From positions 144,460,001-144,524,000 of the forward strand of contig OZ260661.1 in NCBI GenBank assembly GCA_965285935.1: a stretch of 64,000 nucleotides of DNA. The letters run 5' to 3'. This stretch comes from Ophelia neglecta. Lineage: Eukaryota. A program made the position numbers and the translations under genes. Below, piece after piece: positions 7,085-63,313 of the stretch; positions within the stretch are counted from its first letter, which is position 1; every line of letters begins with the position of its first letter. The notes beneath the pieces were generated by a model. That model was not told the DNA's origin. It saw nothing but the letters and a program-made list of their open reading frames with translations, and searched no databases.

Positions 7085-7732
7085 GGCAAAATCATAAGTC
7101 AAGAATATTTCAATTAGTCGGTCCGAAATTCATATCAAGTATATGTGTAATTAAAGGCAAGGGTTGACTAGAAAACCTACTATATGTTCAAGGTCACAAG
7201 TGTGTCATGAATAATACTATTCTTCACAACCGATTAATATGAACTAACCAAAAGAAGTCTTCGTTCAGAGCATTTCTGTTTCACCAGTAGAATTGATTAC
7301 ATGATAATAGATTATTGTTTTAGACCAATGTCTAAGACACATGTCACGCAGACCGTTGAGTGACGCGTGTTTTGCATGGGTTTGGTATTTTGGCTTCCTG
7401 CACCTGCAGTCACATGTCAAGACAAATAGTGTGTCTATTGCACAAGGGCGCGGCTCAGGATCATAGACTAGAGGCTTAAAAAACAGATACTGCCTCGAAT
7501 GTTGTTTAATTCTGACAATAAACTATTGCAATAGGCATAGGTTATATGAAGATAATTTATGGACGAAACACGAAGGCGTTGGGTAAGTTTGATATAAGCA
7601 CCATACGCACACAAGGAATAACCAAATATAGTCTGGGCAGGGTCGTTAGTAGTAAAGATCTAATTGGGTGATTTAGGCACCGGAAGTAGTCGTTCATCCA
7701 GACAGGAGAGTTTATAATAACCGAACGATTTT

Positions 7733-17154: not shown

Positions 17155-17219
17155 TCGGTTAAGTTAGCTAACACCTCGATTGACTCACCGCCCTATCCGA
17201 AGTAACTCTGTCCTATATA

Positions 17220-17395
17220 CAGTGAAACCTGTGAATTAAGACCACCCAAGGTACTGGAAAATGCTGGTCTGATTTTGGAGGTGGTCTGTTCAGAAAGGTT
17301 ATTTGACATTGAAAGTATAGAGCATGGTCCTCATATGGTGGTCTGAATTGACAGGTGGTCTGATTATAGAGGTGGTTTTAAGCCAGGTTTCACTG
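17220..17395. mobile_element. Tc1/mariner-type MITE (TA TSD)
   Basis: ta|cagtgaaacctg...caggtttcactg|ta; three copies in the window. Confidence 0.88.
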
Positions 17396-17557
17396 TATAA
17401 TTGTTACTTACACCAACAAGGGCGGGACCCTACAATAAGCTGTAATCAATCAATGAAAATAGCTACCAGGATGTAGCTGGTGAAGAGCGATACCACAGGG
17501 CTTTGTGACAGGCACTAACACACTTACGTTCTGTCGTCAGTAACAGATGTGTCCTGG

Positions 17558-19083: not shown

Positions 19084-19261
19084 CAGTGAAACCTGTAAAT
19101 TAATACCACTAAAGGAACTGGAGAATACTGGTCTGATTTTGGTGGTGGTCTGTTTGGACAGGTTATTTTACATTAAAAGTATATAGCAACACCCTCATAG
19201 TTGTGGTCTGGATTGGCAGGTGGTCTGATTATAGAGGTGGTCTTTAAGGCAGGTTTCACTG
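19084..19261. mobile_element. Tc1/mariner-type MITE, copy 2
   Basis: ta|cagtgaaacctg...caggtttcactg|ta, colinear with 17220-17395. Confidence 0.88.
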
Positions 19262-19690
19262 TATTGTGTGCATAGAAGAGCTTTTGCATGGTTGTTTTGG
19301 ATAAGATCAGTAGACATCAGGTTTCTGGTTTGAGTATCAAACAGCCCCAGAAAGTGGCAGAAAGAGATGAACCTGACTGTATGTATACTTACATACAGTT
19401 CCAAACAGTGGCAGAAGATCAAGGGGACATTGACCAGGAAGGAAAAGATCAGGGGCATACTGACCACAGAGGAGATCACCAGGTGCATATAAGCGTGCGG
19501 TATTCAATGAAAGAAGGGCCACGTTTCTCATAAACACACTGTGTTAACTACTACAGTTACCTAGTAGTGATTATATACAATTAAGATGGACAAGATTTGG
19601 TTTTCCACGTGTCTATGAAACAGAGATCCGTTATGTAAAACTCGGATATTAGTAAACAGAAGTGATATTTATCCCTTTTGTTACGCTAAA

Positions 19691-27468: not shown

Positions 27469-29211
27469 AACATCTAAGGGGTTAAAGATTATGTGAAATT
27501 GACCGAAAGGGGCAATTTTTGTCAACATTCCCAGCAACGAACAGAGAAATATGCAAAAGAATGAGAATAGTCCTAAGGTATGTCGATCGAGGCGGTCATT
27601 TTGAAAATCGCCGACATGAACAAACCCTGGTTTCCTGTTTGTATTTGGAATAAATGATCAAAGAAGCCATTGCTTACGGGTAATCGGGATATATGTGTGC
27701 GGTTTTTTAAGTGATTGTGGTGGAAAAGAAATCTTACATAATTGCACGATTGACCTAATTTAGTTTGCTATATATTAACCATTGTGGTATCTAGTATAGT
27801 GGCCGTTATTTGCTTTAATACGACGCTTCTCATGCCACTCTTAAAGTTTGTTCCCGGTTCGGCTGTAAACTTGCAAGTCATTGCTATGGTTAAACTGAAG
27901 CCGACTGACAATGAAGATCAGTCATCGACAATATACGTTTATACGGGACAAATATAAGCTGTCAGCTATAGCATTGCGCTAGTTGTTAAAATTATAACGC
28001 AACAAACTTAAGACAATACAATTGTTCAATTAAGTCACTTTCATCGAGAAGAGGACCAAAGTATCCCAAAATGTTAATAAAACAGAATGGCGTAATCCCA
28101 ACGTGGGACTAGTAAGAACTCGTAAAGGGAAAAACACAGGCTCATGTACTGTCGTATTTATAGCAGCTGGATAAAAATGGTTATTATTCTTGTGTATGAC
28201 TGAAATCCTGAAATTGACAACTATCATCAGGCGATAATGAACAACTCTAGGCTGTATTTGCCTGTACCAATGCCATTTTTTATAACTAATTTTTCACAAG
28301 TTTAGTCGGGGAACTGGGTATTGGAGTTTGTTGGCCTGCAGCTGGTGATTCCTGGTGAATTCTGACTATTTTATTTACTATTTTTGATGATTTTGTTTTT
28401 CTGCCGGGTAGCCACCCCTGTTTATCCCCCACTGCGCCATTCCACGACGTGTTTGTTTACATATCTGAGTGCTGATTTTTGTCCATTTGTGTGGTGTAAC
28501 TTTGAGTTGTTTGGTTCCTACAGTTTGCCTTCCTTTCCATGTTCTCTGGGGGAATGTTTACATTTAGTTCTCTACAAACCGTGCTTGTTAATCCAGCTTA
28601 TCCAGAATACATGACTGTTGTCACAGCGTCAACGACCTTTGATGCACATCGGATGCTATGTAAACACGGTAATGCCTAGTTGGCATGCTTCCCCATCCAT
28701 CAAGTCTATCAGAGCTGCCGGCTTCGTGTGTCTGAATATGGCATCATAACCAGGCAACAAGGCGGAGAGCTCCGTTAGAAAGTGGGGGATACAATGGTCG
28801 CTGTATTATCCGGGTCTCTGTATAAAGCGCTGTATTCGGCGCTGGGCGCTGCTGCTCCAGGTCGCATTAGAATTAGAAACTAGTGTTAGGGTAGGCTAAT
28901 CCCATTATTCTTTCCCAGCGCAGCGTTGACAGTAGGGCCCCGAGAACATGGAGCCGTATAACCCCGCGTGGTGGAAAATTGTCACAAAGGAATGCTCAAC
29001 GGCTTAGCGAGGTAGCTAGGATTTAGAGAATAGTCATAGCATTATATATATTTAAACGGAGTAGCAGTAGCGCATACAACACAAATCAGGAAGGCATTCG
29101 TTCAACAATTTTTACACCGAATGCTCTTGGATATTATTCGTTGTAATTTAAAAAGACCCATTACATGGCACCCTAGCTTAAAGAAATATCCGAAGAAGAG
29201 TGATATACTTG

Positions 29212-29277
29212 ATGTCGGCTGTACAGGCGCTGAAAGCAGATGTGGACGAGACGGTCGTTTGGCAGGCTCCGTGGGAG
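29212..29277 (+). CDS. Alternative first coding exon, WQAPWE family copy A: MSAVQALKADVDETVVWQAPWE
   Basis: ATG, 22 open codons, GAG|gtaggt phase-0 donor compatible with the 51671 acceptor; homologous to exons at 31241 and 37112. Confidence 0.8.
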
Positions 29278-30681
29278 GTAGGTGTGTCCATTATTAGTAG
29301 GTCCGAGCATCCGAGCAACGCCTTGGAATATCCACTTCCTACCTCTTAAATAACCACCGCTCAGCCCTTAAATAGCCACTTCCCAGCTCTTAATAGCCAC
29401 TTCTCAGCTCTTAAATAACCACTTCGCACCCGTCAGATAGCCACTTTGGAGCAATATAACCGATTTCCCAGGAAATAAAATTGCGTGGCCCACTTGCTTG
29501 AAGAAATAGGAAATAAGCGAGAATAATTGACTTTTTTTTATCTATCAATACATTCCAGTTTAGGGGAATTGGGAAAATAGGTGCACCAGATAGACCACAT
29601 CACGGACTCGTAATCACATTATCAGCTAACACATAGGGTAATACTCAGTCCGAACGTTGAGAATGGCTGGTAAATTTATTCATATAACTTTTTAAGGCAT
29701 TCCGCTTGTCCCCCCCCCCCCTCCGCGGAGAGTTACAGGCAGGGGGGTCAAATAAGGCAGTATTTTAGACATTCAAAACCGTGTAATGGTATTCCTTTCC
29801 ATCGAGTGGGGTAGGGTAAGGTGTGGGGACGGTGAGTGGGGGTAGGAATGGTTGGAAAGGGGGAGGGGCGGGGGGATGGTTGGCTAGAGGAGGGGCTTGG
29901 GGTTGAGGTTGGGGAGGAGTAGTCTCGGTAAATTAGTGTACAGAAAGGCTTCTCGATAAAGGTTCACCCGAAACAGGTCAATCTAGGAAAAGTAATACCA
30001 AACAAGCGTCAACCAGAATAAACAAGAGTTACAATCATAGAGGGCCGAGCTAGGCATACAGCCCCATCTTGTGAACGTAATACGAAGCAAGCATTTGATG
30101 CATGGTAGATACACTATATTGGCTTATTGCTATCGGAATAAAATCATATCAGAAATATAACTCCAATCGTAGTGGCCAATTTTCCATTGTTCTGCTACCA
30201 GCTTGTATCAATAGACGTCATAAATAGGACATGATTTGCGCACTTTCCACCAGAACGCTGATGGCAGTTGGCCAGAAGACGTCAGCAAAAAATAAGTACG
30301 TCTGCCAAATTGCCTTCTTTATTATAGGAACTAATTGGACTAATAAGAAATATATTTACCACGCAGAGTAAAGAAACGCCGTCGGTTATTTGAAGATTGC
30401 AATCTGCAAGATGTGCCAAAACTATTACTGGATTCACGTGATATTGCCAGCAAAGACGAAGGAATATCTTTGCCACTTATTAGTGGGAATTGAAACGAAT
30501 AAGTATTATCCTTTGATAATTTCGATTCAGCAGGTTGTTAATTGTGCGGTGGAGGACATTAGAACGTCTATTCTAATGAAATTAATCAGTGTAAATGATT
30601 GTGTTTTGTGTTGTGCAACTAACTGAAAGATCGTGCTAGGATGCAGACACACCTAAAGCGGTGAACTAAGGTAACTATGAT

Positions 30682-30750
30682 GCTCTCTAGAAGGCGACAT
30701 AAGCTGCTCTCTAGAAGGCGACATATTGCGCTCTCCAGAAGGCGACATAT
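30682..30750. repeat. ~23-bp tandem repeat, 3 copies, followed by a TATA-like tataaata
   Basis: gctctctagaaggcgacata repeated. Confidence 0.8.
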
Positions 30751-31240
30751 TCGCTGCGACAGGGTATAAATATAGGTTGTGCGTATGTATTGTAGGTACC
30801 TAGAGATTTCTACTGATCGTCTTTGAAAAAGAAGATTTCGCTTTGAGTGGCTAATTCCTGGAATGGAAAGATTGTGCTTGCTGAGGCCAATCCGCTCACT
30901 TTGTTTTCACACCTTTTGAATTAAGTTGCTAAGCACACGCGCTGTGTTCCATCAGAGTGTTTCCTGCTACATCAGGGTGGAAAAGGCGATCGGAAAAACC
31001 TCCCCTCTCCGTGGAGCTTTGTACAGCAGCCGATGACGGCAGCCGATAGAGGGCGCTAATGAGGTACCCAGAGTGTTGTACTGTAGTGTATCAGACCTAT
31101 TGACACCGCTCACCAGTTATATTTACATGTCTATTGCAAGGAGAACTAGTACCTGTATTGTATTCAAACCAATTCTGCCATTTCTTGAAATCATAATAGT
31201 TTGTTATCCATAACGAGACTTCATCCTTGGGAATTACTCT

Positions 31241-31318
31241 ATGGCGGATGTACAAAAAGTTCCAACGATAGTTAAGACAGCGGAAGACGAGGTGCGGATA
31301 TGGCAGGCCCCGTGGGAG
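31241..31318 (+). CDS. Alternative first coding exon, WQAPWE family copy B: MADVQKVPTIVKTAEDEVRIWQAPWE
   Basis: ATG, 26 open codons, GAG|gtaagt consensus phase-0 donor. Confidence 0.82.
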
Positions 31319-31850
31319 GTAAGTAAAATGACTCGACGACAAGGCATGCACCCTTCACATAAAGTGAAGTGAGGATATGGTATGCGCTCTGGAATCGGGT
31401 GGGCCGGGTTGGGGGTGGGTGTGGGGGGTGGGGTGGGGGTGGGGTGGGGTGGGGTGGTGGTGTCAAATACAATGAGGTGCCGATATGGCATGCGACGTGG
31501 GAGGTATGTAAAATGACTCGACGACAAGGCATGCACCTTGAGAGCTACATAGAGTGAAGTAAGGATATGGCATGCGCCGGCGGGTAGGGGGGGGGGGGTC
31601 AAATACAATAGGTTGCCGATGTGTTAAATGAAGTGAGGTTATGTCATACGCCGTGAATCGGGGGGAGGGGGGCTAAATACAATGATTTGCCGTTGTGACA
31701 TGCGCCGTGGGAGGTCAGTAAAATGACTCAAGGATAAGGCTTGCATCATTGAAGCTACATTAAATGAAGTGAGGTTATATCATGCGCCGTGAGAGGGGGG
31801 TGGGGGTGGGGGTAAATACAATGAGTTGCTGATATGGCATGCGCCGTGCG
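31290..31850 (+). repeat. Tandem repeat built from the 3' end and donor site of first exon B, with G-runs
   Basis: atatggca.gc..cgtgggag|gt..gtaaaatgactc recurs at about 31298, 31483 and 31695; partial copies at 31375, 31563, 31775, 31831. Confidence 0.85.
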
Positions 31851-34800
31851 CCATATGGCCTGTGCCTTGGGACATAAGTACAATGAAGTACAGATGATGC
31901 ATGCGAGTTGGGGTTTATACAGCTGCCATACACAGGCCGGAAGGATAGGTGTGTTTTATAACGTTTACACTTTAATGACACTTCCTGACTGAGGGTGACC
32001 TTGTTAAATTCGTTTAAGGTAGCTTAACTTGATCCTGCTCAGGGTGTTTTGTAGGGATTCATGGTTGTGAATCTGCACTCGTCGGTTCGACCCATCTAAT
32101 GGAACATGATTGAGTACTGATTTTCGTTTTGTGTGCCGGGTATCCACTCCCGTTTTGCTACAGTTGATAATACGCGTATGAACAAAGGTCCATTCATGTG
32201 AAGTGTCATTCAATAAAAAAGCCCACACTTTAATTACAAGCAAAATTAATATAGTAGAGCAATTATGTAAAGTGTCTAGTAATAATTGTCACCGCAGTAA
32301 CTGATAAGTATCTGTTAGAACGTATAGAGGTCAGCATCCATTCCTAGTCATACAACTTTTCGCGAGGCCTATTCGTAGTACTACAGATGCGGTTACAACT
32401 ACCAAGTTAGTCATTGTAAACAGTCCTACCTCTCAGAATGTACGCCTCAGTCTTATGTATTAGGACTTTTCTTGATACAGAAAAAATAAACAAAATATTG
32501 GCCCTAAACAATTTTGTTTGTGTTTTTTAGTCTCTAGCTAGCCTACATTGTACCGTGTTTAATATCGGTTATCTGTGGCTTTTTCCGCAGTTGATTTATA
32601 AACATCACTGACCGAGAACGAACCAAGCAGGCACAACACGTAGAAATCACGTGTTGTAACCACGTAGAAATTTGTTTGAGAAAGGAATATATTATATAAC
32701 GTGAATTTTACACGTGGTAAAGACGTGTATGAAAACAGATGAATTCCACAGCATTTTACACGACTCCTCCACAAATTTTCCACCAGACACATGGAACTTT
32801 TACACGTGGCAACGCCGTGTAAATATGTACTAGTTGTACAAAACATAAAATTACATTGCTCGTCAAATTTATTGGGAACATCGTCCCAAGATAGTGACAT
32901 TCTACTTCTCATTCTGGCCTCCTACTGATATAAGGGCGATACCTGCACTGTGATCATGTGCTGGAAATCATGTTTAATAATTGATAGAAGAACCCAACCT
33001 GCCTTGAACACTTATTACACCCAGAACCTAGTATATTTATAATCACATGGACATAATATTCAAAACACTGACAAATGCATTCTTCTCTAAAGTGACATTA
33101 TTTCGATACATTTGGCTAGTCGATGTTGTAGTTGCTAATCGATGAAACTTTTTAAGTTTAAATGAGTGCATAATCCTCGGGGAATTTATTGGCAAATTAT
33201 TTTTTTTTGCAATCAGGGAGATGATAAAGAAAAAAAAATTTAACCCAAAATCAGTTTTATCCTGCTATCATTGTTCTTACTTTCGATTGATCTCCATCCG
33301 CCTTTCAAAAGATTTTCACCGTTAAGTCAACGTTGATTTGTGGTAATATGCCTGCTGGAATTAAATACCACAGGTATGAAGATGAAAAGTTACAGTTAGC
33401 CATAATGTATGTTTTAAAATTACATAATTATACTTCGCCAATAATCCAAATCTTTTCCACGTGTGAATATAAAATCTTTTCCACGTTCCCAAAATCACGT
33501 GGAATGAATGTGGAATTTACAAGTATAATGTCTCGTGATTAACCTCCACCAATAATACACATCTTTCCCACGTGTGAATTCCACATCTATTCCACGTACT
33601 TATAATCTACGTGAGAACAGGTGGATCCACCTGTTCACAAGTTATCCACCTGAATTCCACGTGGAAAACCACATGATGGGCCTACTGGGAACTTAATGTT
33701 CTGTCTAACAAGAGGCCTCAGTACCAATTTAACACAATTCCTATGGCGCATTCCCAAAACTCTTCATTCCAGGGCTTTGCTGCTAGCAATGAGCAGAACT
33801 TCCCGTTTTCGATTTTCTCAAACATGGAGTCAGCTGCCGTGCCAGTGCTATCACAATACCTGTATCTTTCCACAGAGTGCATTAAACAACAAACTCGCTG
33901 AGAGTCGCACAATTTGATGATGGTTAATAAGATAAAATCTCTAGTTCACGACATTGTACGTATAGCTTTATATTCAATTTCAAACAGGTTTAACACAGCT
34001 CTGCATACGAAACATATAAGTGACTGCTGTCAATTTTGACCCTCGAGCGAGTTACAACGACGAGCGCGGTGCATACTACTAACGCGCTATGTAAATTGGA
34101 TTATTGTTTCGTGACTTTCTCGGTCAAGGCTGTATAACAATCTGGACTGGCATATTCTAGAGAAGGGCGAATAAGTTACACATTAGCTGAAAGTTATCTA
34201 GTCTCATTTGTAATGTGTCGTCAGACATTGCCAGACGATCTTCTTCTTTTCTTATTAGTCCAAAATGAACCCCCTAAAGGCACATTTCATCAGTGTCCTA
34301 CCTTGACCACTGACTTGTTGTATTGTACTCGCATCGTGAAAACACCTGTTGACAACTTCTCAAGTTACATCCATTTTTATTGCTTCTTTTTGATTTTATT
34401 AAAAGCTTATTAACTGTTGGGGCGCTTGGGGTTTGAGTATAAGGGCTTGCCGCTGGTGGATCCTGACGATGCTGACCAATATAAACAAACCTTACCTGCT
34501 TTATGATTTTAATTTGCTTGGCGGGCATTCAATTCCGTTGTTATTGTTGAATATGGATATACATGTATTTTCCTTTTTCCACTGCCGGGAAGCTGTGTAT
34601 GCCTTACGAAGTGAGTTACCTTGGCGGTCTCATAAAAACACTCTGGTAGATACAGCCACGGTAAAGAGGCGGGTCGTGGCTATAATGACCAGGCCCATGA
34701 AAGCACATAAAGTATATGCTCTGGAAGATATAGCTTAATGTGCCTCTGAATGGATGGCATCTGATAGGAATGCAACCTTATAAGGCTTGGCGTGTCCTGC

Positions 34801-35059
34801 TAATATCAACGTCCGGGTGGATCCTGGAGTTGTCAGTGGGGTCGTATTGATCATCGCCAATAGCCATACCAATATATTGCCCGTGTTGAACCTCCAATGG
34901 CCAATAGGCAGAAGTTTGTTTTGCTAGTATTGAATATCCAACAAGTTAATACCAGGATTTTATATTGCCCATTTTGAACACCCGATGGCTAATAGATAGT
35001 AGTGTGCTAATGGTATGAAAGTTTAAAGAAATTAATTACACTAAAAAGTTTCGTATTGT

Positions 35060-36685
35060 ACCCCGCCAATAGGCGAACTCTATATTGCACGTTGTACCTG
35101 GCCAATATCCAGTACTTAATAATGTCCGTGTTGTACCTGGCCGGTGGCCAGTGCTTAATATTGCTCGAAATGTACCTCGCCAATAGCCAGTACTATGCTT
35201 ATATTGTACCTCGCCAATAGCCAGAACTTTATAGTGCCTTTGTTGAACCTCGCCAATAGACAGTACTTTATATTGTCTGTGTTGTACCTCGCCAATAGCC
35301 AGTACTTTATATTGTCTGTGTTGTACCTCGCCAATAGCCAGTACTTTATATTGTCTGTGTTGTACCTCGCCAATAGCCAGTACTTTATATTGCATGTATT
35401 GTACCTCGCCAACAGCCAGTACTTTATAGTGCCTTTGTTGAACCACGCCAATAGACAGTACTTTATATTGTCTGTGTTGTACCTCGCCAATAGCCAGAAC
35501 TGTATATTGCTCGCCTTGTATCTCGCCAATAGCCAGCACTTTGTATTGCATGTATTGTACCTCGCCAATAGCCAGCACTTTATATTGCATGTATTGTACC
35601 TCGCCAATAGCAAGTACTTTATATTGCTCGCCGTGTACCTCGCCAATAGCCAGCACTTTATATTGCATGTATTATACCTCGCCAATAGCCGGCACTTTAT
35701 ATTGCATGTATTATACCTCGCCAATAGCCAGTACTTTATATTGCATGTATTGTACCTCGCCAACAGCCAGTACTTTATATTGCATGTATTATACCTCGCC
35801 AATAGCCGGCACTTTATATTGCATGTATTGTACCTCGCCAATAGCCAGTACTTTATATTGCATGTATTGTACCGTGCCAATAGCCAGAACTTTATATTGC
35901 TCGCCTTGTACCTCGCCAATAGCCAGCACTTTATATTGAATGTATTATACCTCGCCAATAGCCGGCACTTTGTATTGCATGTATTGTACCTCGCCAACAG
36001 CAAGTACTTTATATTGCATGTATTGTACCTCGCCAATAGCCAGTACTTTATATTGCTCGCCGTGTACCTCGCCAATAGCCAGTACTTTATATTGCATGTA
36101 TTGTACCTCGCCAATAGCCAGCACTTTATATTGTCTGTGTTGTACCTCGCCAATAGCCAGTACTTTATATTGCTCGCCTTGTACCTCGCCAATAGCCAGT
36201 ACTTTATATTGCATGTATTGTACCTCGCCACTAGCCAGTACTTTATATTGCTTGCCTTGTACCTCGCCACTAGCCAGTACTTTATATTGCTCGCCTTGTA
36301 CCTCGCCAATAGCCAGTACTTTATATTGCATGTATTGTACCGTGCCAATAGCCAGAACTTTATATTGCTCGCCGTGTACCTCGCCAATAGCCAGCACTTT
36401 ATATTGAATGTAATGTACCTCGCCAATAGCCAGCACTTTATATTGCATGTATTGTACCTCGCCAACAGCAAGTACTTTATATTGCATGTATTGTACCTCG
36501 CCAATAGCCAGCACTTTATATTGCATGTATTGTACCGTGCCAATAGCCAGAACTTTATATTGCTCGCCGTGTAGCTCGCCAATAGCCAGCATTTTATATT
36601 GCTCGTTGCTCGTATTGTACCTCGCCAATAGCCAGTACTATATTACTCGGCTTGTACCTCGCCAATAGCCGGCACTTTATATTGC
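35060..36685. repeat. 39-bp minisatellite ttgtacctcgccaatagccagtactttatattgcatgta
   Basis: About 41 copies; explains ORFs 35036-36668. Confidence 0.98.
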
Positions 36686-37111
36686 CCGTAGCTTACGAAA
36701 ATGATTTGGGCGGAGACTAAATAAAGTCTAGATTTCAGCTAACATACTTTATGTGTGGGGACGTCTCCTAAAACACGTTCTTACCCACTTTGTATCGGCC
36801 TTCATACGACAATGTTTCGTAAAAAACACCCCATTAGGGCAAAACAAGCCAACAACAAGCACTGTGCAAACACATACATTAGTAATGAGACGAGCACGTG
36901 CCTGGGACAGGGATGGGAGGCATTGATATTTGAGGCCATCTTAATACGGGGTTCTGGCTGTACAGAACATCAGGTATCATCAACGTTACTCAGATGTGTT
37001 AAGCAGACTGATGTGGATCTTAGCGTGATAAGCCATTATCAGTTTACCCCTCGACATTTCCATAATTAAGGGATACTTCAACAAAAGAAGAGTAACACTA
37101 ATGTAACACTG

Positions 37112-37189
37112 ATGTCGAATTTGAACACAATCCAAATTTCACCGACCGCTGAGGTTGACGCGAACATCATATGGCAGGTCCCCTTGGAG
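37112..37189 (+). CDS. Alternative first coding exon, WQAPWE family copy C: MSNLNTIQISPTAEVDANIIWQVPLE
   Basis: ATG, 26 open codons, GAG|gtaggt phase-0 donor; shares upstream aagaagagt and the start context tgATGTCG with copy A. Confidence 0.78.
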
Positions 37190-45214: not shown

Positions 45215-45520
45215 GTTGTTTGGGGATTTATGTGACTTTCAACACTTATCTAGTCATATCACCATGGTGCCTTCTTGTGACAGTGGGCTCAATGCCCTCT
45301 TTAGAGTGCTGCCTCTTGAGTACCGGTCGAAGACACCAGACAGGAAACCCCACCCAGTCACATACTGACACCGGGTTGACCAGCCCTGATACTAACCCCG
45401 AGATACCAGGCGCCTGGCAGGGGAGCTATCAGTACCTTCTTTTACGTTTTGTGTTTGACGCGATTCGAACCCCGATCTTCCACTTATGAGGCGGACGCTC
45501 TAACCACTCCGACACGTTTT
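45215..45520 (-). mobile_element. Full-length tRNA-derived SINE
   Basis: Reverse complement: gtcggagtggttagagcgtccgcc..ggggttcgaatc head, then body homologous to the 13528 copy. Confidence 0.85.
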
Positions 45521-51670: not shown

Positions 51671-51785
51671 GAGCTGGTCGGAAGTAGTCCTTCGGAGCGT
51701 AACTGGCGTGGGATCTTCATCTCCCTGCTGGTGATCGTCGTTGTCCTAGGTCTCATCGTCGCAGCCATCGTCCTCGTCACCCCAA
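51671..51785 (+). CDS. DPP10: DPP6/10-like first constant exon: juxtamembrane segment plus transmembrane helix
   Basis: tgtttttcag|GAG CTG GTC... translates to ELVGSSPSERNWRGIFISLLVIVVVLGLIVAAIVLVTP, then A|gtaagt. Phase-0 acceptor, no ATG. Confidence 0.95.
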
Positions 51786-54700: not shown

Positions 54701-57700
54701 GTTTAACTTTAACCGATATTCCTCAAATGAGCACAAGTTTAACCGTAACCGATATTACGCAAATGAGCACAAGTTTAACTTTAACCGATATTCCGCAAAT
54801 GAGCACAAGTTTAACTTTAACTGATATTCTCCAAATGAACACAAGTTTAACCTTAACCGATATTCCCCAAATGAGCACAAGTTTAACTTTAACTGATATT
54901 CCCCAAATGAGCACAAGTTTAACTTTAACTGATATTCCCCAAATGAGCACAAGTTTAACTTTAACTGATATTCCCCAAATGAGCGCAAGTTTAACTTTAA
55001 CCGATATTCCGCAAATGAGCACAAGTTAAACTTTAACAGATATTCCCCAAATGAGCGCAAGTTTAACTTTAACCGATATTCCCCAAATGAGCACAAGTTT
55101 AACTTTAACCGATATTCCGCAAATGAGCACAAGTTTAACTTTAACAGATATTCCCCAAATGAGCGCAAGTTTAACTTTAACCGATATTCCGCAAATGAGC
55201 ACAAGTTTAACTTTAACCGATATTCCCCAAATGAGCGCAAGTTTAACTTTAACCGATATTCCGCAAATGAGCACAAGTTTAACTTTAACCGATATTCCCC
55301 AAATGAGCGCAAGTTTAACTTTAACCGATATTCCGCAAATGAGCACAAGTTTAACTTTAACCGATATTCCGCAAATGAGGACAAGTTTAACTTTAACCAA
55401 TATGCCCCAACTGTACCTCTGTTGATAAAAGGTTTCCTGTAATTGATATTTTGATACCTGATTTGTGAGTGAGATAGCCTGTTACCAATATAACCTAACC
55501 CCACCTTTGTGAGTTAAAGGTTTCTTGTAACCAATATTTCCTTTACTAGAAATTTGTATTGAACCCATTTATTTTAGACTTTCAAAAAAATGCATTTTGT
55601 AGAGCCCCTGGTTAAGTTGTTTATTAATAAACAACAACTTTCAATATAAAGTTTTTCCAGAAACATGTCCCGTTTGAATTATATCAATAGGTCTGTATTT
55701 ATTTCGTCCCTTTATATTACCTTAGTGTTTCTTATATATTTACTAGCTACCGTCCAATAAATCGTGATTTATCTGCTATTGTATCCAAGAAAAAAATTCA
55801 CGAAATCTCTCATTTTTTCAGAGATTACTGAATATTGACATTTATTTAGTGTCGGATGATCTTAACTATATCCTCTTGGGCTACCACAAGAAAATGGTCT
55901 TCAGACATTCCTTTACCGCCGAGTACATAATCTATGATAGAAGTAAAAAGGACCCAGCTCAGTAAGTACTAGACGTTTTCAGCTACAGACTAAAAACGGA
56001 GCATGCTAATAAGTAGTATACATTTCGAACAGAGGTCAAGGGAACCCTGCCGAGTAAGTAGTATACATAATTTTCGACATCGGGAAGAGGGATGAAGGGG
56101 CCATTAGATATCCAATCACTAGCTGTACGAAGCTAGTTCCGGCACCAATTGTAATATCCTTTTTATCCCGAATTTTCTGATTTCAATGTGAATAATTGAA
56201 ATTTTGACTTCTGGTCTGTTAATTGGTTTACTGCTAGGTGGTCATATATGTGACAATAATAACATTCTGGCCATCTATTTTACGTGTTTTCATTGACACA
56301 AGGGTAGTAAAAGTGGCGCGCTCATGGTTGTGTTTACATAGGGTAGTGTTGGAGAACCGCGTATACCGTGCAAGCTTGTTGGTCATCATGGTCGGCTTTT
56401 TTAACCAGGAATTACACATTTGCTTTTAAATGAGATTTGCTTTAAAAATGTATATGATTTGATTCTGAACGAATGTTTTGAAAAAAACGTTATAATGGTG
56501 GCTTATGGAAAACCTAATGCTCCCCTAATGCCAAAAAAGACGGAGATGCGCAGTAAGAAGAATAAAAAAAATATTCGAAAACTGTAAAACGAGCCAAGAA
56601 TTATAACTAATATGCAGTATATATGTAACGGATGTAGCATGGATCCTGTTGATTGAGTAGAATATTACCCTAGACGGTAAGATGAATCATATGTACATCT
56701 GACCTTGATCTAGACAGTGATTACGATGCAATGAACTAACGACCGGAAATTCTAATTGACGCTTAATATAATAAACATGTTTTACCTTTGCTCAGAAAAG
56801 CTGTTTTTTGTCGTGTCACTCCGTGAGTCTGTGGGCAACATAACTCAAACTACTGGTCCGGAATTGAATTAATTTGATAAGGATGTAGCTGAGGACCAGG
56901 CCTCTAATTGATTAACTTTTGCTTGGCCTACTTTCATTAAGTAGGATATGGCGCCATTTTTAAAGCTTACCTGCTAGCTAACACACTCCTCAGCAGAGCT
57001 ATCGCCAAATGTGCCGTGCAATCAATATGAAACTCATAGTGTAGTGGTTAAAGCACTCGCTTGTCACGCCGGAGTCGGGGTTGAATCCCCGTTTTAAACT
57101 TTTTGTGAACATTCAAGTGCTCATATATCAGTTGTGCATGGGTCCATGGAAGAATAAAGAACCTGGATTATAGCCAGACAATTCATTTATTTAATAAAAG
57201 AAAGAGAGTGCATGCTTGAACAAATGTTAATGCATCCGATTGGATGCACATTTCAGTGGATGATAAAGGTCGTTAACTATTTACATCTTCTTTGCCAAGT
57301 AAACAGAGCCCGTTCCCTACCAGTGCCAATGAGGAGTGGAATGGCAAGAGACTGCAGTTCGCTGGCTGGTCTCCTACAGGGCACCAACTGGTACAGCATC
57401 ATTATTTATGTTATCATTCAAAGTGTTATATGAGTTCAGTCAACGCTTGGCTCAATAGGTTACTTCTCATGTGTTCTATCTATGAATTGGGATAAGGTGT
57501 ATCCAAAATAATTTACATCAAAACAACCTATTACAACGATAGCCCTGTTTTTTACACTGATTATAATATCAAAACTACATTTTGCTGCACCTACTGTTAA
57601 GTAAATAAAATGATTATCTTGTTTTCAGACGTTTGTATATGAAAACAATTTGTACCATCAATCGGACCCATACTCCACGCCAACCCAGGTCACGGAAAAT

Positions 57701-60700
57701 GGACGCCCGAAAATAATTTATAACGGCATCCCTGATTGGCTGTATGAAGGTAAGGCTTTACTAAAATTAACATTATATGTCTTTTTGGCATTTTGGTAGA
57801 ACTCAAATATTAAATTCTTTCATTATTTCTTTATCACCGGATAGGGAACAGAACCCGGTTTCTGGAAGCGTCTTAAATATATTTCGATAAAAATCAGGAT
57901 TAAAGTGCTTAATCTTTCTTAACTTGATAATCTGGAAGCTGGATTTGGTCTTAAACCCAGTCTTTTTGGTCTTAAACAATATCCTGGTCAATGGAAACAC
58001 AGATTAACGCGGCCACAGGTAATCGATATCGGATTATCTAATTAAAACCTTACGATCTCTTCTGAAAACCTGGGCATGGTGATTGATGTGTGTGGACCGG
58101 ACGTTAATAGTTGTTCCTGTTGATTACGGACTGGATTTGGTCTTTAACTTAAACCTGGTCAATGGAATCACTGATTCAATGGAATCACCGATTAAGGCGG
58201 TCTCAGCTAATCAGTAATAGGCTAATGTAATCCCAAACCCAACACATCTAGAAACCAGGCCTTGGTGATCACTGCTATTATTAGGGTTGGTTAATTGGTT
58301 GTTTGTTTGGTGTTTGCCATTTTGGTCTTAACATAATCCTGGTCAATGAAAACACTGATGAATGCAGTCTCCGCAGTCTCGTAACTAGTACTGTTTTGCT
58401 ACAGAATAAAACTGTTAATTGTTAGGCCTGGGTGTAAGCTGACATGTGTTCCCGTTACAGTGAAGAATTGTCACTGGAAACACCGATCGACGCGGGTGAT
58501 AGATGTGTGCGGACCGGAAACTGATAGTTCCTGTTGATAACTGACTGATTTACTATACTAACCCTGATTTACGCTTTTACTATGTCTGCCCCATATCCAA
58601 TCCAGTGTTAATGTGTACTATATCTGGGTTTTATATTCCCCCAGAAGAGGTGTTGGGTAGTAATGTGGCCCACTGGTGGTCCCCAGGCGGTGATTATCTG
58701 TGTTACGCCATGTTTAACGACTCCCAAGTGCCGCTGTACAAATTTCCTTACTACGGAGCTGGCACCAACATCTATGGCAACATTGAATCTATCGCCTATC
58801 CTAAGGTAGGTAGTTTCCTTCTACAATGAATAATGGAACAATTTATTTGTAACCATCAGTCAGTTTTTCAATCCTGTTTCATTCACATTTGGATCAGTAT
58901 ATATATATGTAAAATAGGAAGGAATTACAACATTTTACTTGTTCATATCGATTCGAACCATTTTAAGCAATTATTCTTGTGTTGTGATTTTTTCGTCCTA
59001 GCATACGGGTCGGTAATCATACTAAACTTGGTTATGTTATATATATTCATTAACGTTAATTTGGTAAAAGTTACTGAAGGTATGGTATATAAGTTTGACA
59101 ATCATTTGATTTTGGGTATTTGATTCATTTTTGGTGTGTAGGCCGGGGACCAAAGGGAGAATATCAACCCTACCTTCAAACTATTTGTGGTGAAGAGCTC
59201 CAATGTAAAAGGAGTTCACAAACACCTCCAGCCTCCAGTTGTGACAGGCCAGGGAAAGTACGTATTAAACGAACGTCTCTCTCTCTATAGATACACATCA
59301 ACCACTCAGTAAACGAGTCAAGGCCAGAAACCTTGAATATAATAACCATTCTCTTTGCAATTTTTAATTCCTTCTCTCACAGATTTGTCTATTTTACGAT
59401 GGTGAGATGGAGAGACGATGGTCACGTGATGATCGCGTGGTCGAACCGAGCCCAAAACAAAACGGTCATTACTATCTGTGACGTCATATCTACGGACTGC
59501 GTCAAGGTATCAGTCTAATATATACTAACTTTCCCACTGACCTTGCATTTTCGTTCTTATTTATTCGATTTTGTGATTATCACCCGATAAGTAAGAGCTT
59601 ATTTTGTAAACAGAATCTACAAGAAACTAACCATGAAGGGAAAGGCTGGGTCACTATCGTAAGTTTACCTTTTACAGTTTGTTTTAAGGCAAACATGCCT
59701 GATATTGCTATCTATGCTGCACTGTTTATATAATATAGATCGGTATTTAGTGGGTTAGAGACAACTCCCGATTCCAATGAATGACAATTTGTATTTGTAT
59801 TCTTAATACGGGCATATTTACAGTAATGGAAGTAGGTATTGTTGTTGGTGATTCTGATGATTATGCACAAATTAAATAGACTATTCTAATTCAATGAACT
59901 TGCACTTTCTGTCGGATGTCCATTCCCGTTATTATGCGGAAAACCTCTCATTTGATTAATGTAAAGCGACATTACATATCATTTACGAACTAAGTGTAGC
60001 TTCCTGTTTTTTCTCCAAATCAAATATTCGAGTCAGTATTAAGGGAGTGAGCAGACAGATCAAAGGGTTGGCGCCCCGGTTAGTAAAACGCACTCTAGCT
60101 TTTCCATGTCTATTGAGTAGTATATGAATGACTCTAGACCTACGACCGTGTTGATAATTTTTGTTTAGAACGAAGCAAGATTTATAGACGGAGGCCGTCA
60201 ATACCTCACGATCTTACCACACACGGACGGAGAAAACGGATTCTGGAAACACGTGACAATGGTATCTGCTCCGGTGCGTAGATACATTCTCTTCAGCCGT
60301 AGCCAAAGATATTATCGCTTTTGTTATATTGACCATCTCCTTTAATAAATTTACCATTACTTTTGATACTATTTAGCTCGACATGGCCATGTCACGTGGT
60401 CTATAGTTCTATCAAAGCCATTGTTCACCTGGTCAAAATATATTCAAGCCGATAGTCATTTAAATAATGCATATTGTCAACTGGTTAGTTTCTTTCTTTT
60501 ATATAGCTCGATACAAATGGGAGGGTCCAAGCGCTGACCGACGGGACCCACGAAGTTTCCAGAATACTGGCTTATGACAATGAGAATAAGCGTGTGTAAG
60601 TTACTAAAGAAACAACCGTTGACTGTGTCAGATATAGCACGTGTTTCACGATAAGAAACACTGCACGTATTATTCCGATTATTTTGAACATCGACCGTTC

Positions 60701-63270
60701 GTACACGACATTACTCCTAAAGTATGCTTCATATTGCTATTGTATATTGGAAGCAAAAAGCTACAGTAAGGCATCAAAATTATAATAGCCTTACACTAAT
60801 AAATATGAACACAGTATGTAACTTGACACAGGGTGCTATCCTCCTGCTTTTAATAATGGTATTGAAATTAAACACTCTGGTATCTAACACAATTAAATAA
60901 TTCTGATGGCCTACCTGCACGTTACAATAGAAATTATCCTTTTATTTTGAAATTTGGTTTTTGGGACACAGTATAGTACAAAAATGTGACAACCCCTTGG
61001 AGTGATGTACTAATGATGGCATTACGGTACAACAAAGTTCAACGATAATATCGACACTACACGTGTAGATTACCTAGGAAGTGCCACCTGGCCCGGCGCG
61101 TTTATGTATTAGTATATTCTGGTTCCACAGATAACACAATGCCTAATCGGACTTTGCGTGTCAAGGCAGGTAAATAGCTTTTTTTTTAAACTTTTTTTCA
61201 TCGAACAGCTACTACATAAGCACCAATGGCGATCCTCGAAAGAGCCACGTGTTCTGGGTTGGCCCTCCCTACGGGCCTACCGGCCAATCAACATGTTTGA
61301 CATGTGACCTAGATGATGAATGCCAGTACAACAAGGCGGAGTTTTCAAGGAGCGCAAAGTTTTATATACTACAGTGCCTTGGTCCGGGGGTACCTAGATA
61401 TACACTTAGGAGTACAATGGACGACAGGGGTAAGACCGCCAATTCATGCATAACATGTAGCTAACGGGTAGTCCCATTATTTGTTTGATTTGTCAGCGTA
61501 ATTTTGATCTAGTATAGACCTTGTGCACTTGACGTCACAGTCCATGTGCTCTGGGTGATACAAATATATACGATTGTCTGCATTTATAGAGCTGTTGATT
61601 CTTTTGACATGAGGTTGGTTTGGAAGCTGGTTCCAGGTCTTTCAACAAATAATGTAATGCCATCTAACTCGATGCCTGATTCCATTTTAGTCATTGAGTC
61701 TACAGTTGACAATAATCTGGAGACGTGATCATTCCTCTTCGTGCCAATATCAAAATAGAAATACATTTTCTTATAGTCAGTCTCTCGAGACTACGTCTAA
61801 TGATAGATATTAAATAACATCAAGTAGTCTGCATGTCATTATTTAGGCAATTTAATCACAGCATATTCATCCTATTGTGCTACAATTATATATGCTCATT
61901 TATCGACACCGGCTTACATATAGCTGCTCAACGCAATTATAAGTACTCAAACAAGAGTAAAATCTGGTTAGACAAATTAGCTGTGATAACTGTGCTCGTC
62001 TAATGCAGAGTATGTTTTAACAAATGAAATTGAAAAGCAAGCTTGTGTAAAGCAGAAATTGCTGATTGTAAATATTACCATTAGAGCTGATATAAAATGC
62101 TTACATTAGCTATATACTCTTTACTGTTGATTTAGAGGTTATCCACAACCTTCTTCATCCAGTCTCACCAGGAATCCGGTAAAAGGAAAATTGTTTCAAG
62201 TTTGCTCAGTTAGAGCACCCAACAGAAAGACAATAAGTCATGATATTGAGTATATGTGTTTATCACCATATAAGACTAATCCACGAGATCATTGGCTCAT
62301 GACGTCAGTGCACAAGGTCTTTATATCATAATGTTTTGTCTGATACTAGTATTGTCATCATTCTGTTACATTTAAAGTCGTATGGATATAATGACTTTTT
62401 AATAAAATTTTAAATAGTCACAATCTCTCTTCGTGCAACTAGCCATTGCGTTAGAAGACAATGCGGAGCTGAGATCCAAACTAAAGAAACTAGCTCTTCC
62501 CTCCAAGGAATACTTCCAGTTTACGGCCACAGATGGCACTGGTAAGTAGACATACTTAACAATAGGTACTGTATTATTAACAGTCTAATTGACTAAACAA
62601 GTCCAATTAGACAATAAGGCGCGAACTTAAATATTCGGATATGTACAGACAGTGCAAAATCATTGATAATATGTACATTTACTAAGCGCTCCATTTATCG
62701 TAAATGAACGCAAGGGCGATTATCAATATATAAAAAAGTGCTCTACTTAAAAGCTTAACTTACTAGAATAAACAAGCATGAATCCATATCAGGAAGTATC
62801 CATTTTATCGGTCTGAGTTTATCTGGAACATTTTATTTACAGAAATATATGGTGAGATGTTGTTGCCTCCACTTCTGAAGAAGGACCACATAACTATGTA
62901 CCCAATGCTGGTCTACACGTGAGTGGTAAACATCAAATGTTTAAATAATGATAGTCCACATGGTTTTGTTTATGAATATTTGAATATGAGTTCAGTTGCC
63001 TCATATTTTGACTGATTAACGTCCAGAATTACCTTAGAAACCAAGCTAGATCTGAATACTCCTTCATATATCCAGGTATAATGGTCCCGGGACTCAGCTG
63101 GTGACGGACGAGTTTAAAATTGGGCTACCCACCTATCTCTCAAGCACAGAGAATGTGATATATGTATCCATAGACGGACGAGGCACCTCCGGACGAGGGG
63201 ATAACTATCTACATCATGTATATCACAACCTGGGGGTCACCGAGGTCACAGACCAGATAGACGGCGCCAG
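51671..63270 (+). CDS. DPP10: Dipeptidyl peptidase 6/10-like (S9B, DPP4 family) type II membrane protein; constant exons, 3'-incomplete
   Basis: 16 GT-AG exons join in consistent phase: 51671-51785, 53674-53769, 54222-54319, 55822-55961, 57300-57390, 57629-57749, 58645-58805, 59142-59257, 59383-59506, 59614-59658, 60169-60273, 60507-60595, 61209-61429, 62443-62541, 62843-62918, 63076-63270. Motifs: ELVGSSPSERNWRGI plus TM helix (DPP6/10 signature), FRHSF, NGIPDWLYEEEV, HWWSP, YPKAG, NRAQN, CLGPGVP, YNGPGTQ, IDGRGTSGRG, LGVTEVTDQI. The symbol means DPP6/DPP10 co-orthologue-like; the catalytic GWSYGG region lies outside the window. Confidence 0.93.
52560..53640. repeat. Intronic minisatellite acgacacttagtgta(C)n with variable C-runs
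   Basis: More than 40 copies; ends about 33 bp before the 53674 acceptor. Confidence 0.97.
53674..53769 (+). CDS. DPP10: DPP6/10-like constant exon
   Basis: cttacag|..NSTDVTMGEPFTFEDMLSNEFTPKTFDATWIG..|gtaatt. Confidence 0.92.
54222..54319 (+). CDS. DPP10: DPP6/10-like constant exon
   Basis: tttttcag|..ETHTYVYMSQGGELMAHDAVTNGTIVLMDNQTF|gtgagt. Confidence 0.92.
54497..55405. repeat. Intronic 36-bp minisatellite atattccccaaatgagcacaagtttaactttaaccg
   Basis: About 25 copies; explains ORFs 54377-55504. Confidence 0.97.
55822..55961 (+). CDS. DPP10: DPP6/10-like constant exon
   Basis: ttttcag|RLLNIDIYLVSDDLNYILLGYHKKMVFRHSFTAEYIIYDRSKKDPA..|gtaagt. Confidence 0.92.
57032..57091 (+). mobile_element. 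tRNA-Asp-like SINE head or pseudo-tRNA
   Basis: tagtgtagtggtt A box, ttgtcacg anticodon-like loop, degenerate ggggttgaatcccc T-arm; no acceptor stem. Confidence 0.6.
57300..57390 (+). CDS. DPP10: DPP6/10-like constant exon
   Basis: gccaag|..KQSPFPTSANEEWNGKRLQFAGWSPTGHQL|gtacag; acceptor chosen to fit phase 2. Confidence 0.85.
57629..57749 (+). CDS. DPP10: DPP6/10-like constant exon
   Basis: ttttcag|TFVYENNLYHQSDPYSTPTQVTENGRPKIIYNGIPDWLYE..|gtaagg. Confidence 0.94.
57849..58265. mobile_element. Intronic MITE copy plus partial duplicate (family of 1981-2223)
   Basis: cccggtttctggaa..gtgcttaatc..ttaacttgataatc..ggtcttaaacc..ggtcaatg..gaaaacctgggc; second partial copy ends tctagaaaccaggccttgg. 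Confidence 0.7.
58645..58805 (+). CDS. DPP10: DPP6/10-like constant exon
   Basis: ccccag|..EEVLGSNVAHWWSPGGDYLCYAMFNDSQVPLYKFPYYGAGTNIYGNIESIAYPK|gtaggt. Confidence 0.94.
59142..59257 (+). CDS. DPP10: DPP6/10-like constant exon
   Basis: gtgtag|AGDQRENINPTFKLFVVKSSNVKGVHKHLQPPVVTGQG..|gtacgt. Confidence 0.9.
59383..59506 (+). CDS. DPP10: DPP6/10-like constant exon
   Basis: ctcacag|..FVYFTMVRWRDDGHVMIAWSNRAQNKTVITICDVISTDCVK|gtatca. Confidence 0.92.
59614..59658 (+). CDS. DPP10: DPP6/10-like constant exon (45 nt)
   Basis: aaacag|NLQETNHEGKGWVTI|gtaagt; contains the family GWV motif. Confidence 0.88.
60169..60273 (+). CDS. DPP10: DPP6/10-like constant exon
   Basis: tgtttag|NEARFIDGGRQYLTILPHTDGENGFWKHVTMVSAP|gtgcgt. 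Confidence 0.88.
60507..60595 (+). CDS. DPP10: DPP6/10-like constant exon
   Basis: atatag|LDTNGRVQALTDGTHEVSRILAYDNENKR..|gtaagt. Confidence 0.92.
61209..61429 (+). CDS. DPP10: DPP6/10-like constant exon
   Basis: gaacag|..YYISTNGDPRKSHVFWVGPPYGPTGQSTCLTCDLDDECQYNKAEFSRSAKFYILQCLGPGVPRYTLRSTMDDR..|gtaaga. Confidence 0.93.
62443..62541 (+). CDS. DPP10: DPP6/10-like constant exon
   Basis: aactag|..IALEDNAELRSKLKKLALPSKEYFQFTATDGT..|gtaagt. Confidence 0.9.
62843..62918 (+). CDS. DPP10: DPP6/10-like constant exon
   Basis: tttacag|..EIYGEMLLPPLLKKDHITMYPMLVY..|gtgagt. Confidence 0.92.
63076..63270 (+). CDS. DPP10: DPP6/10-like constant exon (start of alpha/beta-hydrolase domain)
   Basis: atccag|..YNGPGTQLVTDEFKIGLPTYLSSTENVIYVSIDGRGTSGRGDNYLHHVYHNLGVTEVTDQIDGA..|gtaagt. 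Confidence 0.94.
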
Positions 63271-63313
63271 GTAAGTGTCTTTCAGTCAGCTTAGAACGCC
63301 TTTTCTGTAAATA

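What the first reader, a model, noticed from the sequence alone, without database searches (positions are those of the whole stretch)
29212..37189. Tandemly duplicated family of alternative first exons (WQAPWE motif) for a DPP6/10-like gene
Seen: three mini-ORFs below the ORF-track length cutoff, 2 kb and 6 kb apart. Each starts with ATG and ends at a phase-0 GAG|GTA donor: MSAVQALKADVDETVVWQAPWE (29212-29277), MADVQKVPTIVKTAEDEVRIWQAPWE (31241-31318), MSNLNTIQISPTAEVDANIIWQVPLE (37112-37189). They share an acidic patch, hydrophobic residues and W-Q-[AV]-P-[WL]-E, with differing codons (GCT/GCC, CCG/CCC). Copies A and C also share upstream aagaagagt (29193, 37085), the start context tgATGTCG and a downstream ttcccagct.ttaa. 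The first constant exon (51671) has a phase-0 acceptor and no ATG, so it needs such an exon. Established: vertebrate DPP6/DPP10 are Kv4 auxiliary subunits whose alternative first exons change the cytoplasmic tail and gating; DPP6a/DPP10a confer fast N-type inactivation. Inference: here the variable exon has itself been expanded by duplication into a promoter-choice cassette reminiscent of protocadherin/UGT1A loci, with a conserved juxtamembrane peptide motif I do not recognise.
Basis: partly seen in the sequence, partly recalled or inferred. Interest (0 to 1): 0.9.

Follow-up and report, generated by a model that had tools for sequence, protein, structure and literature searches.

The report
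Duplicated start exons of DPP10-like gene
Three short, related protein-start exons sit in a row in front of a potassium-channel-helper-type gene (DPP6/DPP10-like); their kin lie in front of five sister genes, so they look like real alternative gene starts, though no RNA data exist to show they are used.

Summary
Three ATG-initiated mini-ORFs (29212-29277, 31241-31318, 37112-37189, + strand) each end in W-Q-[AV]-P-[WL]-E followed by GTRRGT. They lie 22.4, 20.4 and 14.5 kb upstream of an ATG-less, phase-0 exon encoding ELVGSS…RNWRG plus the transmembrane helix of a DPP6/DPP10-like protein.

They are neither chance nor a dispersed repeat. A profile of the peptides finds 15 copies in the 762-Mb genome. 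All lie on the gene strand, 2-74 kb upstream of six of the eight paralogues that carry this exon 2.

Exon types group across genes (K/K', B/D/E/I/G, H/L31) and keep their order, so the array predates the gene duplications. Exon B differs from its counterpart in the tandem paralogue as the constant coding exons do (pS 0.42, pN 0.10 versus 0.39, 0.084), while the flanks are unalignable. A, C and K are intact but less constrained. One copy beside the paralogue has decayed.

In other animals the alternative N-termini join at the same E|ELV boundary but are unrelated to each other.

Not shown: transcription, splice junctions and separate promoters (no RNA run exists) and conservation in other species. 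The gene keeps the catalytic GWSYGG, like fly DPP10. Verdict: a new variant of a known kind, moderate interest.

The parts
29212..29277 (+). Mini-exon A, candidate first coding exon (22 aa, MSAVQALKADVDETVVWQAPWE), phase-0 donor GAG|gtaggt, 22.4 kb upstream of exon 2
   Evidence: sequence. (profile hit, E 4e-6 to 2e-8); pN/pS 0.42-0.46 against J and B, p about 0.04.
31241..31318 (+). Mini-exon B, candidate first coding exon (26 aa, MADVQKVPTIVKTAEDEVRIWQAPWE), donor GAG|gtaagt, 20.4 kb upstream of exon 2. This is the best-conserved type (B-type).
   Evidence: the only alignable island with copy D of the tandem paralogue is 93 nt, essentially the exon alone; pS 0.42 and pN 0.10 against D, equal to the constant exons. 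B-type clade, support 83/81.
37112..37189 (+). Mini-exon C, candidate first coding exon (26 aa, MSNLNTIQISPTAEVDANIIWQVPLE), donor GAG|gtaggt, 14.5 kb upstream of exon 2. This is the most divergent of the three.
   Evidence: profile E 5e-13; pN/pS 0.3-1.2 depending on the partner. The P-L-E ending also occurs in the conserved H-type copies.
51671..51785 (+). Exon 2, the first constant exon: acceptor ...tgtgtttttcag|GAG (phase 0), no ATG. It encodes [14 protein letters not shown] plus the transmembrane helix. Donor CCAA|gtaagt (phase 1).
   Evidence: 8 copies in the genome; homologous to the juxtamembrane/TM exon of DPP6/DPP10-like proteins of insects, a nemertean, tunicates, amphioxus and vertebrates.
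55813..63276 (+). Constant exons encoding the DPPIV_N propeller and the start of the S9 peptidase domain. Extents are those of alignments, not exact splice sites: about 55813-55997, 57624-57780, 58640-58816, 59136-59278, 59363-59500, 61196-61438, 62450-62547, 62829-62928, 63072-63276. The gene runs on about 2.8 kb past the window end.
   Evidence: PF00930 hits; tblastn of full-length homologues; collinear 72-89% islands with the tandem paralogue; open frames.
31363..31880 (+). Decayed partial repeats of the 3' end of exon B (EVRIW.APWE-like pieces at about 31363, 31480, 31553 and 31793), interspersed with (GGGGT)n, in the intron just after B
   Evidence: HMM hits and translations; tandem repeats. 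A similar 44-nt duplicate follows copy D.

Best explanation
The window holds the 5' half of a DPP6/DPP10-like gene. The gene encodes a DPP4-family type II membrane protein and keeps its catalytic serine. Its cytoplasmic N-terminus is encoded by an array of homologous first coding exons: A, B and C in the window, and probably K 22.6 kb before it. Each exon supplies the ATG and 22-26 residues, and ends in a phase-0 donor that would splice to the single ATG-less exon 2 at 51671. The products would be M...IW-x-AP-[WL]-E|ELVGSS...TM isoforms. The array is old: it existed before this gene family expanded to eight paralogues, and copies were kept in order in several of them. Shown: the exon anatomy, homology, genome-wide restriction to these loci, and protein-level purifying selection (strong for B-type and H-type copies, weaker for A, C and K). 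Inferred: each exon has its own promoter and they are used mutually exclusively, as in vertebrate DPP6/DPP10. Because all copies keep the same C-terminal box but differ in their first half and in their flanks, the array most likely serves mainly to diversify where and when the gene is expressed, with some tuning of the tail. The box sits where the functional determinant of vertebrate DPP6K lies, next to the exon junction. It probably contacts the cytoplasmic face of the Kv4 (Shal) channel complex or the membrane interface.
For: Anatomy. Not chance and not a repeat: the strict pattern occurs 4 times in 762 Mb against 0 in the control. The DNA of A has no other copy. A true dispersed repeat in the same intron gives 1894 candidates with the same tool. 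Profile searches give 15 copies, all on the gene strand 2.3-74 kb upstream of six of the eight exon-2 paralogues. Selection: B against D has pS 0.42 and pN 0.10, against pS 0.39 and pN 0.084 for 399 codons of constant exons. B-type pairs have dN/dS 0.07-0.21. H against L31 has a ratio of 0.16. Flanks are unalignable. Codon usage varies synonymously inside the box: Ala GCT/GCC/GCA, Pro CCA/CCG/CCC/CCT, and Arg with five codons. Age: the clades (K,K') 91/92, (H,L31) 94/91 and B-type 83/81 cut across genes, and the order K-A-B is kept in the tandem paralogue. Contrast: copy A' beside the paralogue has lost its ATG (GTG), a box Trp and a good donor, which shows what decay looks like at this divergence. 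Same boundary elsewhere: the alternative N-termini of Tubulanus, Styela, beetles and vertebrates all diverge right before ELV. Vertebrate DPP6/DPP10 have alternative first exons plus a common core (PMC3973911). A Shal-type channel gene is present in this genome.
Against: There is no RNA evidence at all: the only public runs are DNA contigs of the same sample. No related species could be examined. The best full-length homologues are only about 41-45% identical, and none shows the box. A and C are much less constrained than B (pN/pS 0.4-0.9). A' shows that such copies can be lost. A, B, C and D share a nearly identical 24-nt 3' block with Gln at box position 2, unlike the chromosome-9 copies, so local gene conversion may add to the similarity within the window. 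No conserved upstream motif or CpG signal marks promoters.
Confidence: 0.68

Rival explanations
1. Only the B-type exon is a working first exon. A, C and K are leftovers of old local duplications that are no longer used and happen still to be intact.
For: B and D evolve like the constant exons, whereas A, C and K against K' have pN/pS of about 0.4-0.9. A has a 4-codon deletion. C has A>V and W>L in the box. A' in the tandem paralogue has decayed.
Against: A, C and K all keep the ATG, an open frame, the box and a consensus phase-0 donor, although the exon types are older than the gene-1/gene-2 split (dS about 0.55). At that divergence the flanks are unalignable and A' has lost three of these features. 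Non-B types are themselves conserved between paralogues: K/K', and H/L31 with ratio 0.16. The P-L-E ending of C recurs in the conserved H type.
Confidence: 0.2
2. The mini-exons are real coding exons but not first exons. One shared upstream promoter and non-coding exon feeds them, and they are chosen by mutually exclusive splicing rather than by promoter choice.
For: Nothing here locates transcription starts. No promoter motif or CpG signal was found. AG dinucleotides exist upstream of B and D.
Against: No conserved acceptor or polypyrimidine tract precedes the ATGs: the upstream sequence of A and C is purine-rich, and conservation between B and D starts only 5 nt before the ATG. In vertebrate DPP6/DPP10 the equivalent exons are true first exons with alternative promoters (PMC3973911).
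Confidence: 0.1
3. The similarity is chance, or the segments belong to a dispersed repeat or transposon.
For: The ORFs are very short, and repeats are abundant in the window: a reverse-transcriptase fragment, satellites and SINE-like elements.
Against: There are only 15 copies in the genome, all upstream of DPP-like paralogues on the gene strand. The flanks are unrelated. The pattern of change is coding-like.
Confidence: 0.01

Closest known systems
Vertebrate DPP6 and DPP10 (DPLP) genes with alternative first exons (DPP6a/K/L/S/D, DPP10a-d)
   Same: A type II membrane protein with the ELVGSxPxxRNW[KR]GI juxtamembrane/TM exon 2 that lacks an ATG. Several upstream first exons each supply the ATG and a short cytoplasmic tail, and join at the same E|ELV boundary (PMC3973911). 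Residues next to the junction matter in DPP6K.
   Different: The alternative exons of vertebrates, tunicates, a nemertean and insects are unrelated to each other within a gene. Here they are paralogues of one another and share a conserved I-W-x-A-P-W-E box. The MNQTA-type inactivation peptide was not found. The catalytic serine is kept.
Fly DPP10 (CG9059): Kv4 ancillary subunit with peptidase activity (PMC4873792)
   Same: An invertebrate DPP10-like protein with a DPP6/10-type transmembrane region and an intact catalytic serine motif.
   Different: Binding to Kv4 and enzyme activity were not tested here. The paper text examined does not mention splice isoforms or an array of homologous first exons.
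Clustered protocadherin and UGT1A loci (variable first exons spliced to constant exons; recalled from general knowledge)
   Same: A tandem array of homologous variable 5' exons, each with its own start codon and 5' splice site, upstream of shared constant exons.
   Different: Those variable exons are large (whole ectodomains or substrate-binding domains), number 9-50, and have proven individual promoters. Here the exons encode only 17-26 residues, number 1-4 per gene, and promoter choice is untested.

Membership tests
DPP6/DPP10-like (DPLP) branch of the DPP4 / S9B family | Short cytoplasmic tail followed by a juxtamembrane ELVGSxPxxRNW[KR]GI motif and a single TM helix, encoded by exon 2 | tested here: met
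   The exon-2 peptide hits 283 proteins at E<=0.001. Full-length hits are named inactive dipeptidyl peptidase 10 or DPP6.
DPP6/DPP10-like (DPLP) branch of the DPP4 / S9B family | Extracellular DPPIV_N beta-propeller plus an S9 alpha/beta-hydrolase domain | tested here: met
   PF00930 hits over the cut-off at window 57629-61395 (C1:144517629-144521395). Exon-by-exon tblastn is collinear with the Tubulanus DPP10-like protein over residues 55-833.
DPP6/DPP10-like (DPLP) branch of the DPP4 / S9B family | Catalytic serine replaced (Asp in DPP6, Gly in DPP10), i.e. an inactive peptidase | tested here: not met
   GW|SYGG is intact in this gene and in its tandem paralogue, as in fly DPP10 (PMC4873792) and in the invertebrate proteins that NCBI names 'inactive DPP10-like'.
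DPP6/DPP10-like (DPLP) branch of the DPP4 / S9B family | Binds and modulates Kv4/Shal channels | not testable with these tools
   Only that one Shal-type N-terminal domain is encoded in the genome.
Genes with alternative first coding exons (alternative promoters) | Each alternative exon has an ATG and a 5' splice site in a phase compatible with a common ATG-less exon | tested here: met
   every copy except the decayed A' starts with ATG. All 15 copies end in a phase-0 G|GT donor (weak, gtagaa, in A'). Exon 2 has a phase-0 acceptor and no Met.
Genes with alternative first coding exons (alternative promoters) | Transcripts start at each exon and splice to the common exon, mutually exclusively | not testable with these tools
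   No RNA run exists for this organism. The three runs found are DNA contigs of one sample.
Variable-exon cassette of the protocadherin/UGT1A type | The variable exons are paralogues of one another, arranged in tandem | tested here: met
   Alignments and profile hits. Order is conserved between paralogues.
Variable-exon cassette of the protocadherin/UGT1A type | An individual promoter in front of every variable exon | tested here: inconclusive
   No shared upstream k-mers beyond shuffles and no CpG enrichment. Sequence alone cannot settle it.

The most novel reading that the evidence does not exclude
The I-W-x-A-P-[WL]-E box is an undescribed cytoplasmic module of invertebrate DPP10-like Kv4 subunits. 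The arrays of homologous first exons, kept through at least two rounds of gene duplication, work as a promoter-choice cassette. With eight paralogues and up to four starts each against a single detected Shal gene, they would give neurons a combinatorial set of A-type-current auxiliary subunits.
Probability: 0.25. Interest if true: 0.7.

Novelty: new variant of a known kind. Interest (0 to 1): 0.45.

Why it matters
Alternative first exons of DPP6/DPP10 are how vertebrate neurons tune A-type potassium currents. Here the same gene architecture exists, but the alternative exons are copies of one another, share a conserved Trp-rich box of unknown function, and have been kept in several paralogues. 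If the exons are used, this lineage reached subunit diversity by duplicating the start exon together with its regulatory surroundings, and the box is a new handle on how the DPP tail acts on Kv4 channels. The case also shows that conservation between paralogues within one genome can validate very short first exons when no transcriptome exists.

Tried and rejected
RNA evidence: the look-up of sequencing runs gave only three DNA-like runs of one sample. Read laying on 28600-34599 confirmed the assembly (run X1 identical; X2 and X3 differ at listed SNPs and indels) but says nothing on expression.

Other species:
- The exon-2 search returned 150 listed homologues, none with the box.
- A search with Artemia DPP10-like residues 14-53 reached only arthropods.
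- A search with the ATG-to-stop ORFs of ten copies (alignment A5) found nothing. The length filter limits this search, so the blank is weak.
- Ten kb upstream of two exon-2 homologues in another assembly (ENA ERZ25069866; loci L039 and L040) hold no box. That distance may be too short, and how that species is related is unknown.
- A full-text search for the motif strings found no paper.

Other tries:
- The N-terminal peptides of 127 homologues do not match the locus.
- A 213-nt island shared by intron 1 of both tandem genes is a dispersed repeat (at least 1894 candidates), not an exon.
- No promoter k-mers or CpG islands were found.
Only the 3-kb loci around hits were read.
- Earlier scan notes hold nothing on this locus.

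Full report
OBSERVATION.
- A = 29212-29277, MSAVQALKADVDETVVWQAPWE|gtaggt
- B = 31241-31318, MADVQKVPTIVKTAEDEVRIWQAPWE|gtaagt
- C = 37112-37189, MSNLNTIQISPTAEVDANIIWQVPLE|gtaggt

A six-frame scan of the window finds no other W-Q-x-P-x-E followed by a donor. The exon at 51671-51785 has a strong acceptor (tgtgtttttcag|GAG, phase 0). It encodes [38 protein letters not shown], contains no Met, and has only seven open codons without ATG upstream. An upstream coding exon is therefore required.

NOT CHANCE, NOT A REPEAT. The window is C1:144460001-144524000 of a 762-Mb, 223-contig assembly.
- The strict 24-nt pattern TGGCARGYNCCNYKGGAGGTRRGT occurs four times in the genome: A, B, C and copy D at C1:144572672. 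The reversed control gives none.
- The DNA around A has no second copy.
- As a positive control, a 213-nt island in the same intron gives at least 1894 candidates with the same tool.

THE GENE.
- Exon 2 has eight copies in the genome. One is this gene, one is a tandem paralogue 75 kb downstream (gene 2, exon 2 at C1:144586743), and six lie on contig 9.
- An exhaustive protein search with the exon-2 peptide gives 283 hits at E<=0.001. The full-length hits are named inactive DPP10 or DPP6, from Artemia, beetles, the nemertean Tubulanus, amphioxus, Styela and vertebrates.
- Exon-by-exon tblastn and PF00930 hits place the constant exons from 51671 to about 2.8 kb past the window end. Identity to any full-length homologue is only 41-45%.
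- The catalytic motif is intact (...IAIWGW|gtaagt then SYGGF...) in both tandem genes. The protein therefore resembles fly DPP10, which binds Kv4 and is an active peptidase (PMC4873792), rather than the inactive vertebrate proteins.
- One Shal-type N-terminal domain is encoded elsewhere on C1.
All searches were exon by exon.

THE EXON FAMILY. A profile of the A-D peptides, iterated three times against the whole genome, gives 15 copies with E<0.05. One further match (E 4.3, on contig 12) is at chance level. Every one of the 15 lies on the gene strand upstream of one of six exon-2 paralogues. Distances are from exon 2:
- Gene 1: K (-74 kb, 22.6 kb before the window; MTTLRYAEATPKTEAEEAKIWRAPWK|gtatga), A (-22.4 kb), B (-20.4 kb), C (-14.5 kb).
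- Gene 2: K' (-53.8 kb), A' (-16.0 kb), D (-14.1 kb).
- C9:8920247(-): L31 (-19.6 kb), I (-16.5 kb), L34 (-7.3 kb).
- C9:8899188(-): H (-9.0 kb), G (-2.3 kb).
- C9:9005092(+): E (-16.8 kb), F (-8.8 kb).
- C9:707568(+): J (-61.8 kb).

All copies but A' start with ATG. All end W-x-[AVL]-[PS]-[WLR]-[EKR] at a phase-0 GT donor. H and L31 share a TAA at codon 5 followed by a conserved internal ATG (MSKTE[EL]P[DE]VNIWRAPLE). They are better read as 17-residue exons than as pseudogenes.

SELECTION AND AGE.
- Between gene 1 and gene 2, 399 codons of constant exons have pS 0.39 and pN 0.084. B against D has pS 0.42 and pN 0.10.
- The alignable B/D island is 93 nt, essentially the exon, in otherwise unalignable flanks.
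- B-type pairs have dN/dS of 0.07-0.21 with near-saturated dS. H against L31 has a ratio of 0.16.
- Inside the box the codons vary synonymously: Ala GCT/GCC/GCA, Pro CCA/CCG/CCC/CCT, and Arg with five codons.
- A maximum-likelihood tree of the 78-nt exons is short and mostly weak. It still recovers (K,K') at 91/92, (H,L31) at 94/91 and a B-type clade (G,(B,D),(E,I)) at 83/81. Exon types therefore group across genes.
- The order K-A-B and the 2-kb A-B spacing recur in gene 2. So the exon duplications predate the gene duplications.
- A' shows what decay looks like at this divergence: ATG>GTG, a box Trp>Arg, and the donor gtagaa.
- A, C and K are intact but less constrained (pN/pS about 0.4-0.9; single-pair p 0.009-0.08, and 1e-4 for C against K, uncorrected).
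- Caveat: A, B, C and D share an almost identical 3' block with Gln at box position 2, unlike the contig-9 copies. Some local gene conversion is therefore possible.

COMPARISON. In Tubulanus, Styela, beetles and vertebrates the annotated isoforms diverge exactly before ELV, the same exon-1|exon-2 boundary. Within each species, however, the alternative N-termini are unrelated to each other. Vertebrate DPP6/DPP10 are documented to have alternative first exons and a common core of 25 exons. In DPP6K the residues next to the junction (Met-12 to Met-17) carry the isoform's effect (PMC3973911). The box found here sits at that position. None of 127 N-terminal peptides of homologues matches this locus, and the motif strings appear in no paper searched.

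WHAT COULD NOT BE DONE. No RNA run exists for the organism. The three runs found are DNA contigs of one sample; they confirm the assembly and show polymorphism. No related genome or transcriptome carrying the box could be reached. Promoter signals were not detectable from sequence. Transcription, junctions, promoter choice and any effect on Kv4 therefore remain inferences.

VERDICT. The reading as a family of duplicated first coding exons of a DPP6/DPP10-like gene is well supported by within-genome comparative evidence. Support is strongest for B and weaker for A, C and K. The 'promoter-choice cassette' and any channel function are untested. It is a new variant of a known architecture, of moderate interest.

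Noticed in passing
G000:C1:144437441-144437518 (22.6 kb before the window start; locus L033 1501-1578): A fourth, distal copy (K) of the mini-exon family on the + strand: MTTLRYAEATPKTEAEEAKIWRAPWK|gtatga. It has a counterpart K' 6 kb downstream of gene 1's last exon (C1:144532943-144533020). The DNA between K and the window start was not read.
   Followed up: partly
just past the window end, C1:144525135-144525400 (locus L006, about 1135-1400), and C1:144594100-144594715 in gene 2: The donor end of the exon that finishes ...IAIWGW|gtaagtag is followed by a tandem array of decayed copies of 'SIWGW gtaagtag', in both tandem genes. This is a minisatellite seeded from an exon end and its splice donor. 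The same habit is seen after exons B and D.
   Followed up: partly
window 4981-6845 (+): Open frames with a reverse-transcriptase domain (PF00078, E 1e-15): a retroelement fragment upstream of the array.
   Followed up: partly
window 7730-12445: A long satellite that leaves long open frames on both strands. The same satellite family fills C1:144578770-144582150 in intron 1 of gene 2 (about 67% identity) and the first 590 nt of locus L033 near K.
   Followed up: partly
window 35053-36685: A 39-bp minisatellite of 42 copies between exons B and C. It gives spurious ORFs in several frames on both strands.
   Followed up: yes
window 45215-45427; also 17215-17397 and 19071-19263: SINE-like dispersed repeats. 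The 213-nt element has at least 1894 candidate copies in the genome at about 90% identity. The 180-nt element recurs at least six times in the 184 kb read.
   Followed up: yes
G000:C9 (707568, 7174989, 7223438, 8899188, 8920247, 9005092) and C1:144586743: The genome holds eight DPP6/DPP10-like paralogues with the ELVGS exon, but only one Shal-type N-terminal hit (C1:44938960). The two most divergent paralogues (C9:7174989 and C9:7223438) gave no mini-exon hit.
   Followed up: partly
window 28600-34599: Contigs of runs X2 and X3 differ from the assembly at many listed SNPs and indels in this 6-kb stretch. None of the listed ones falls in exon A or B, but 48 further differences were not shown.
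   Followed up: no
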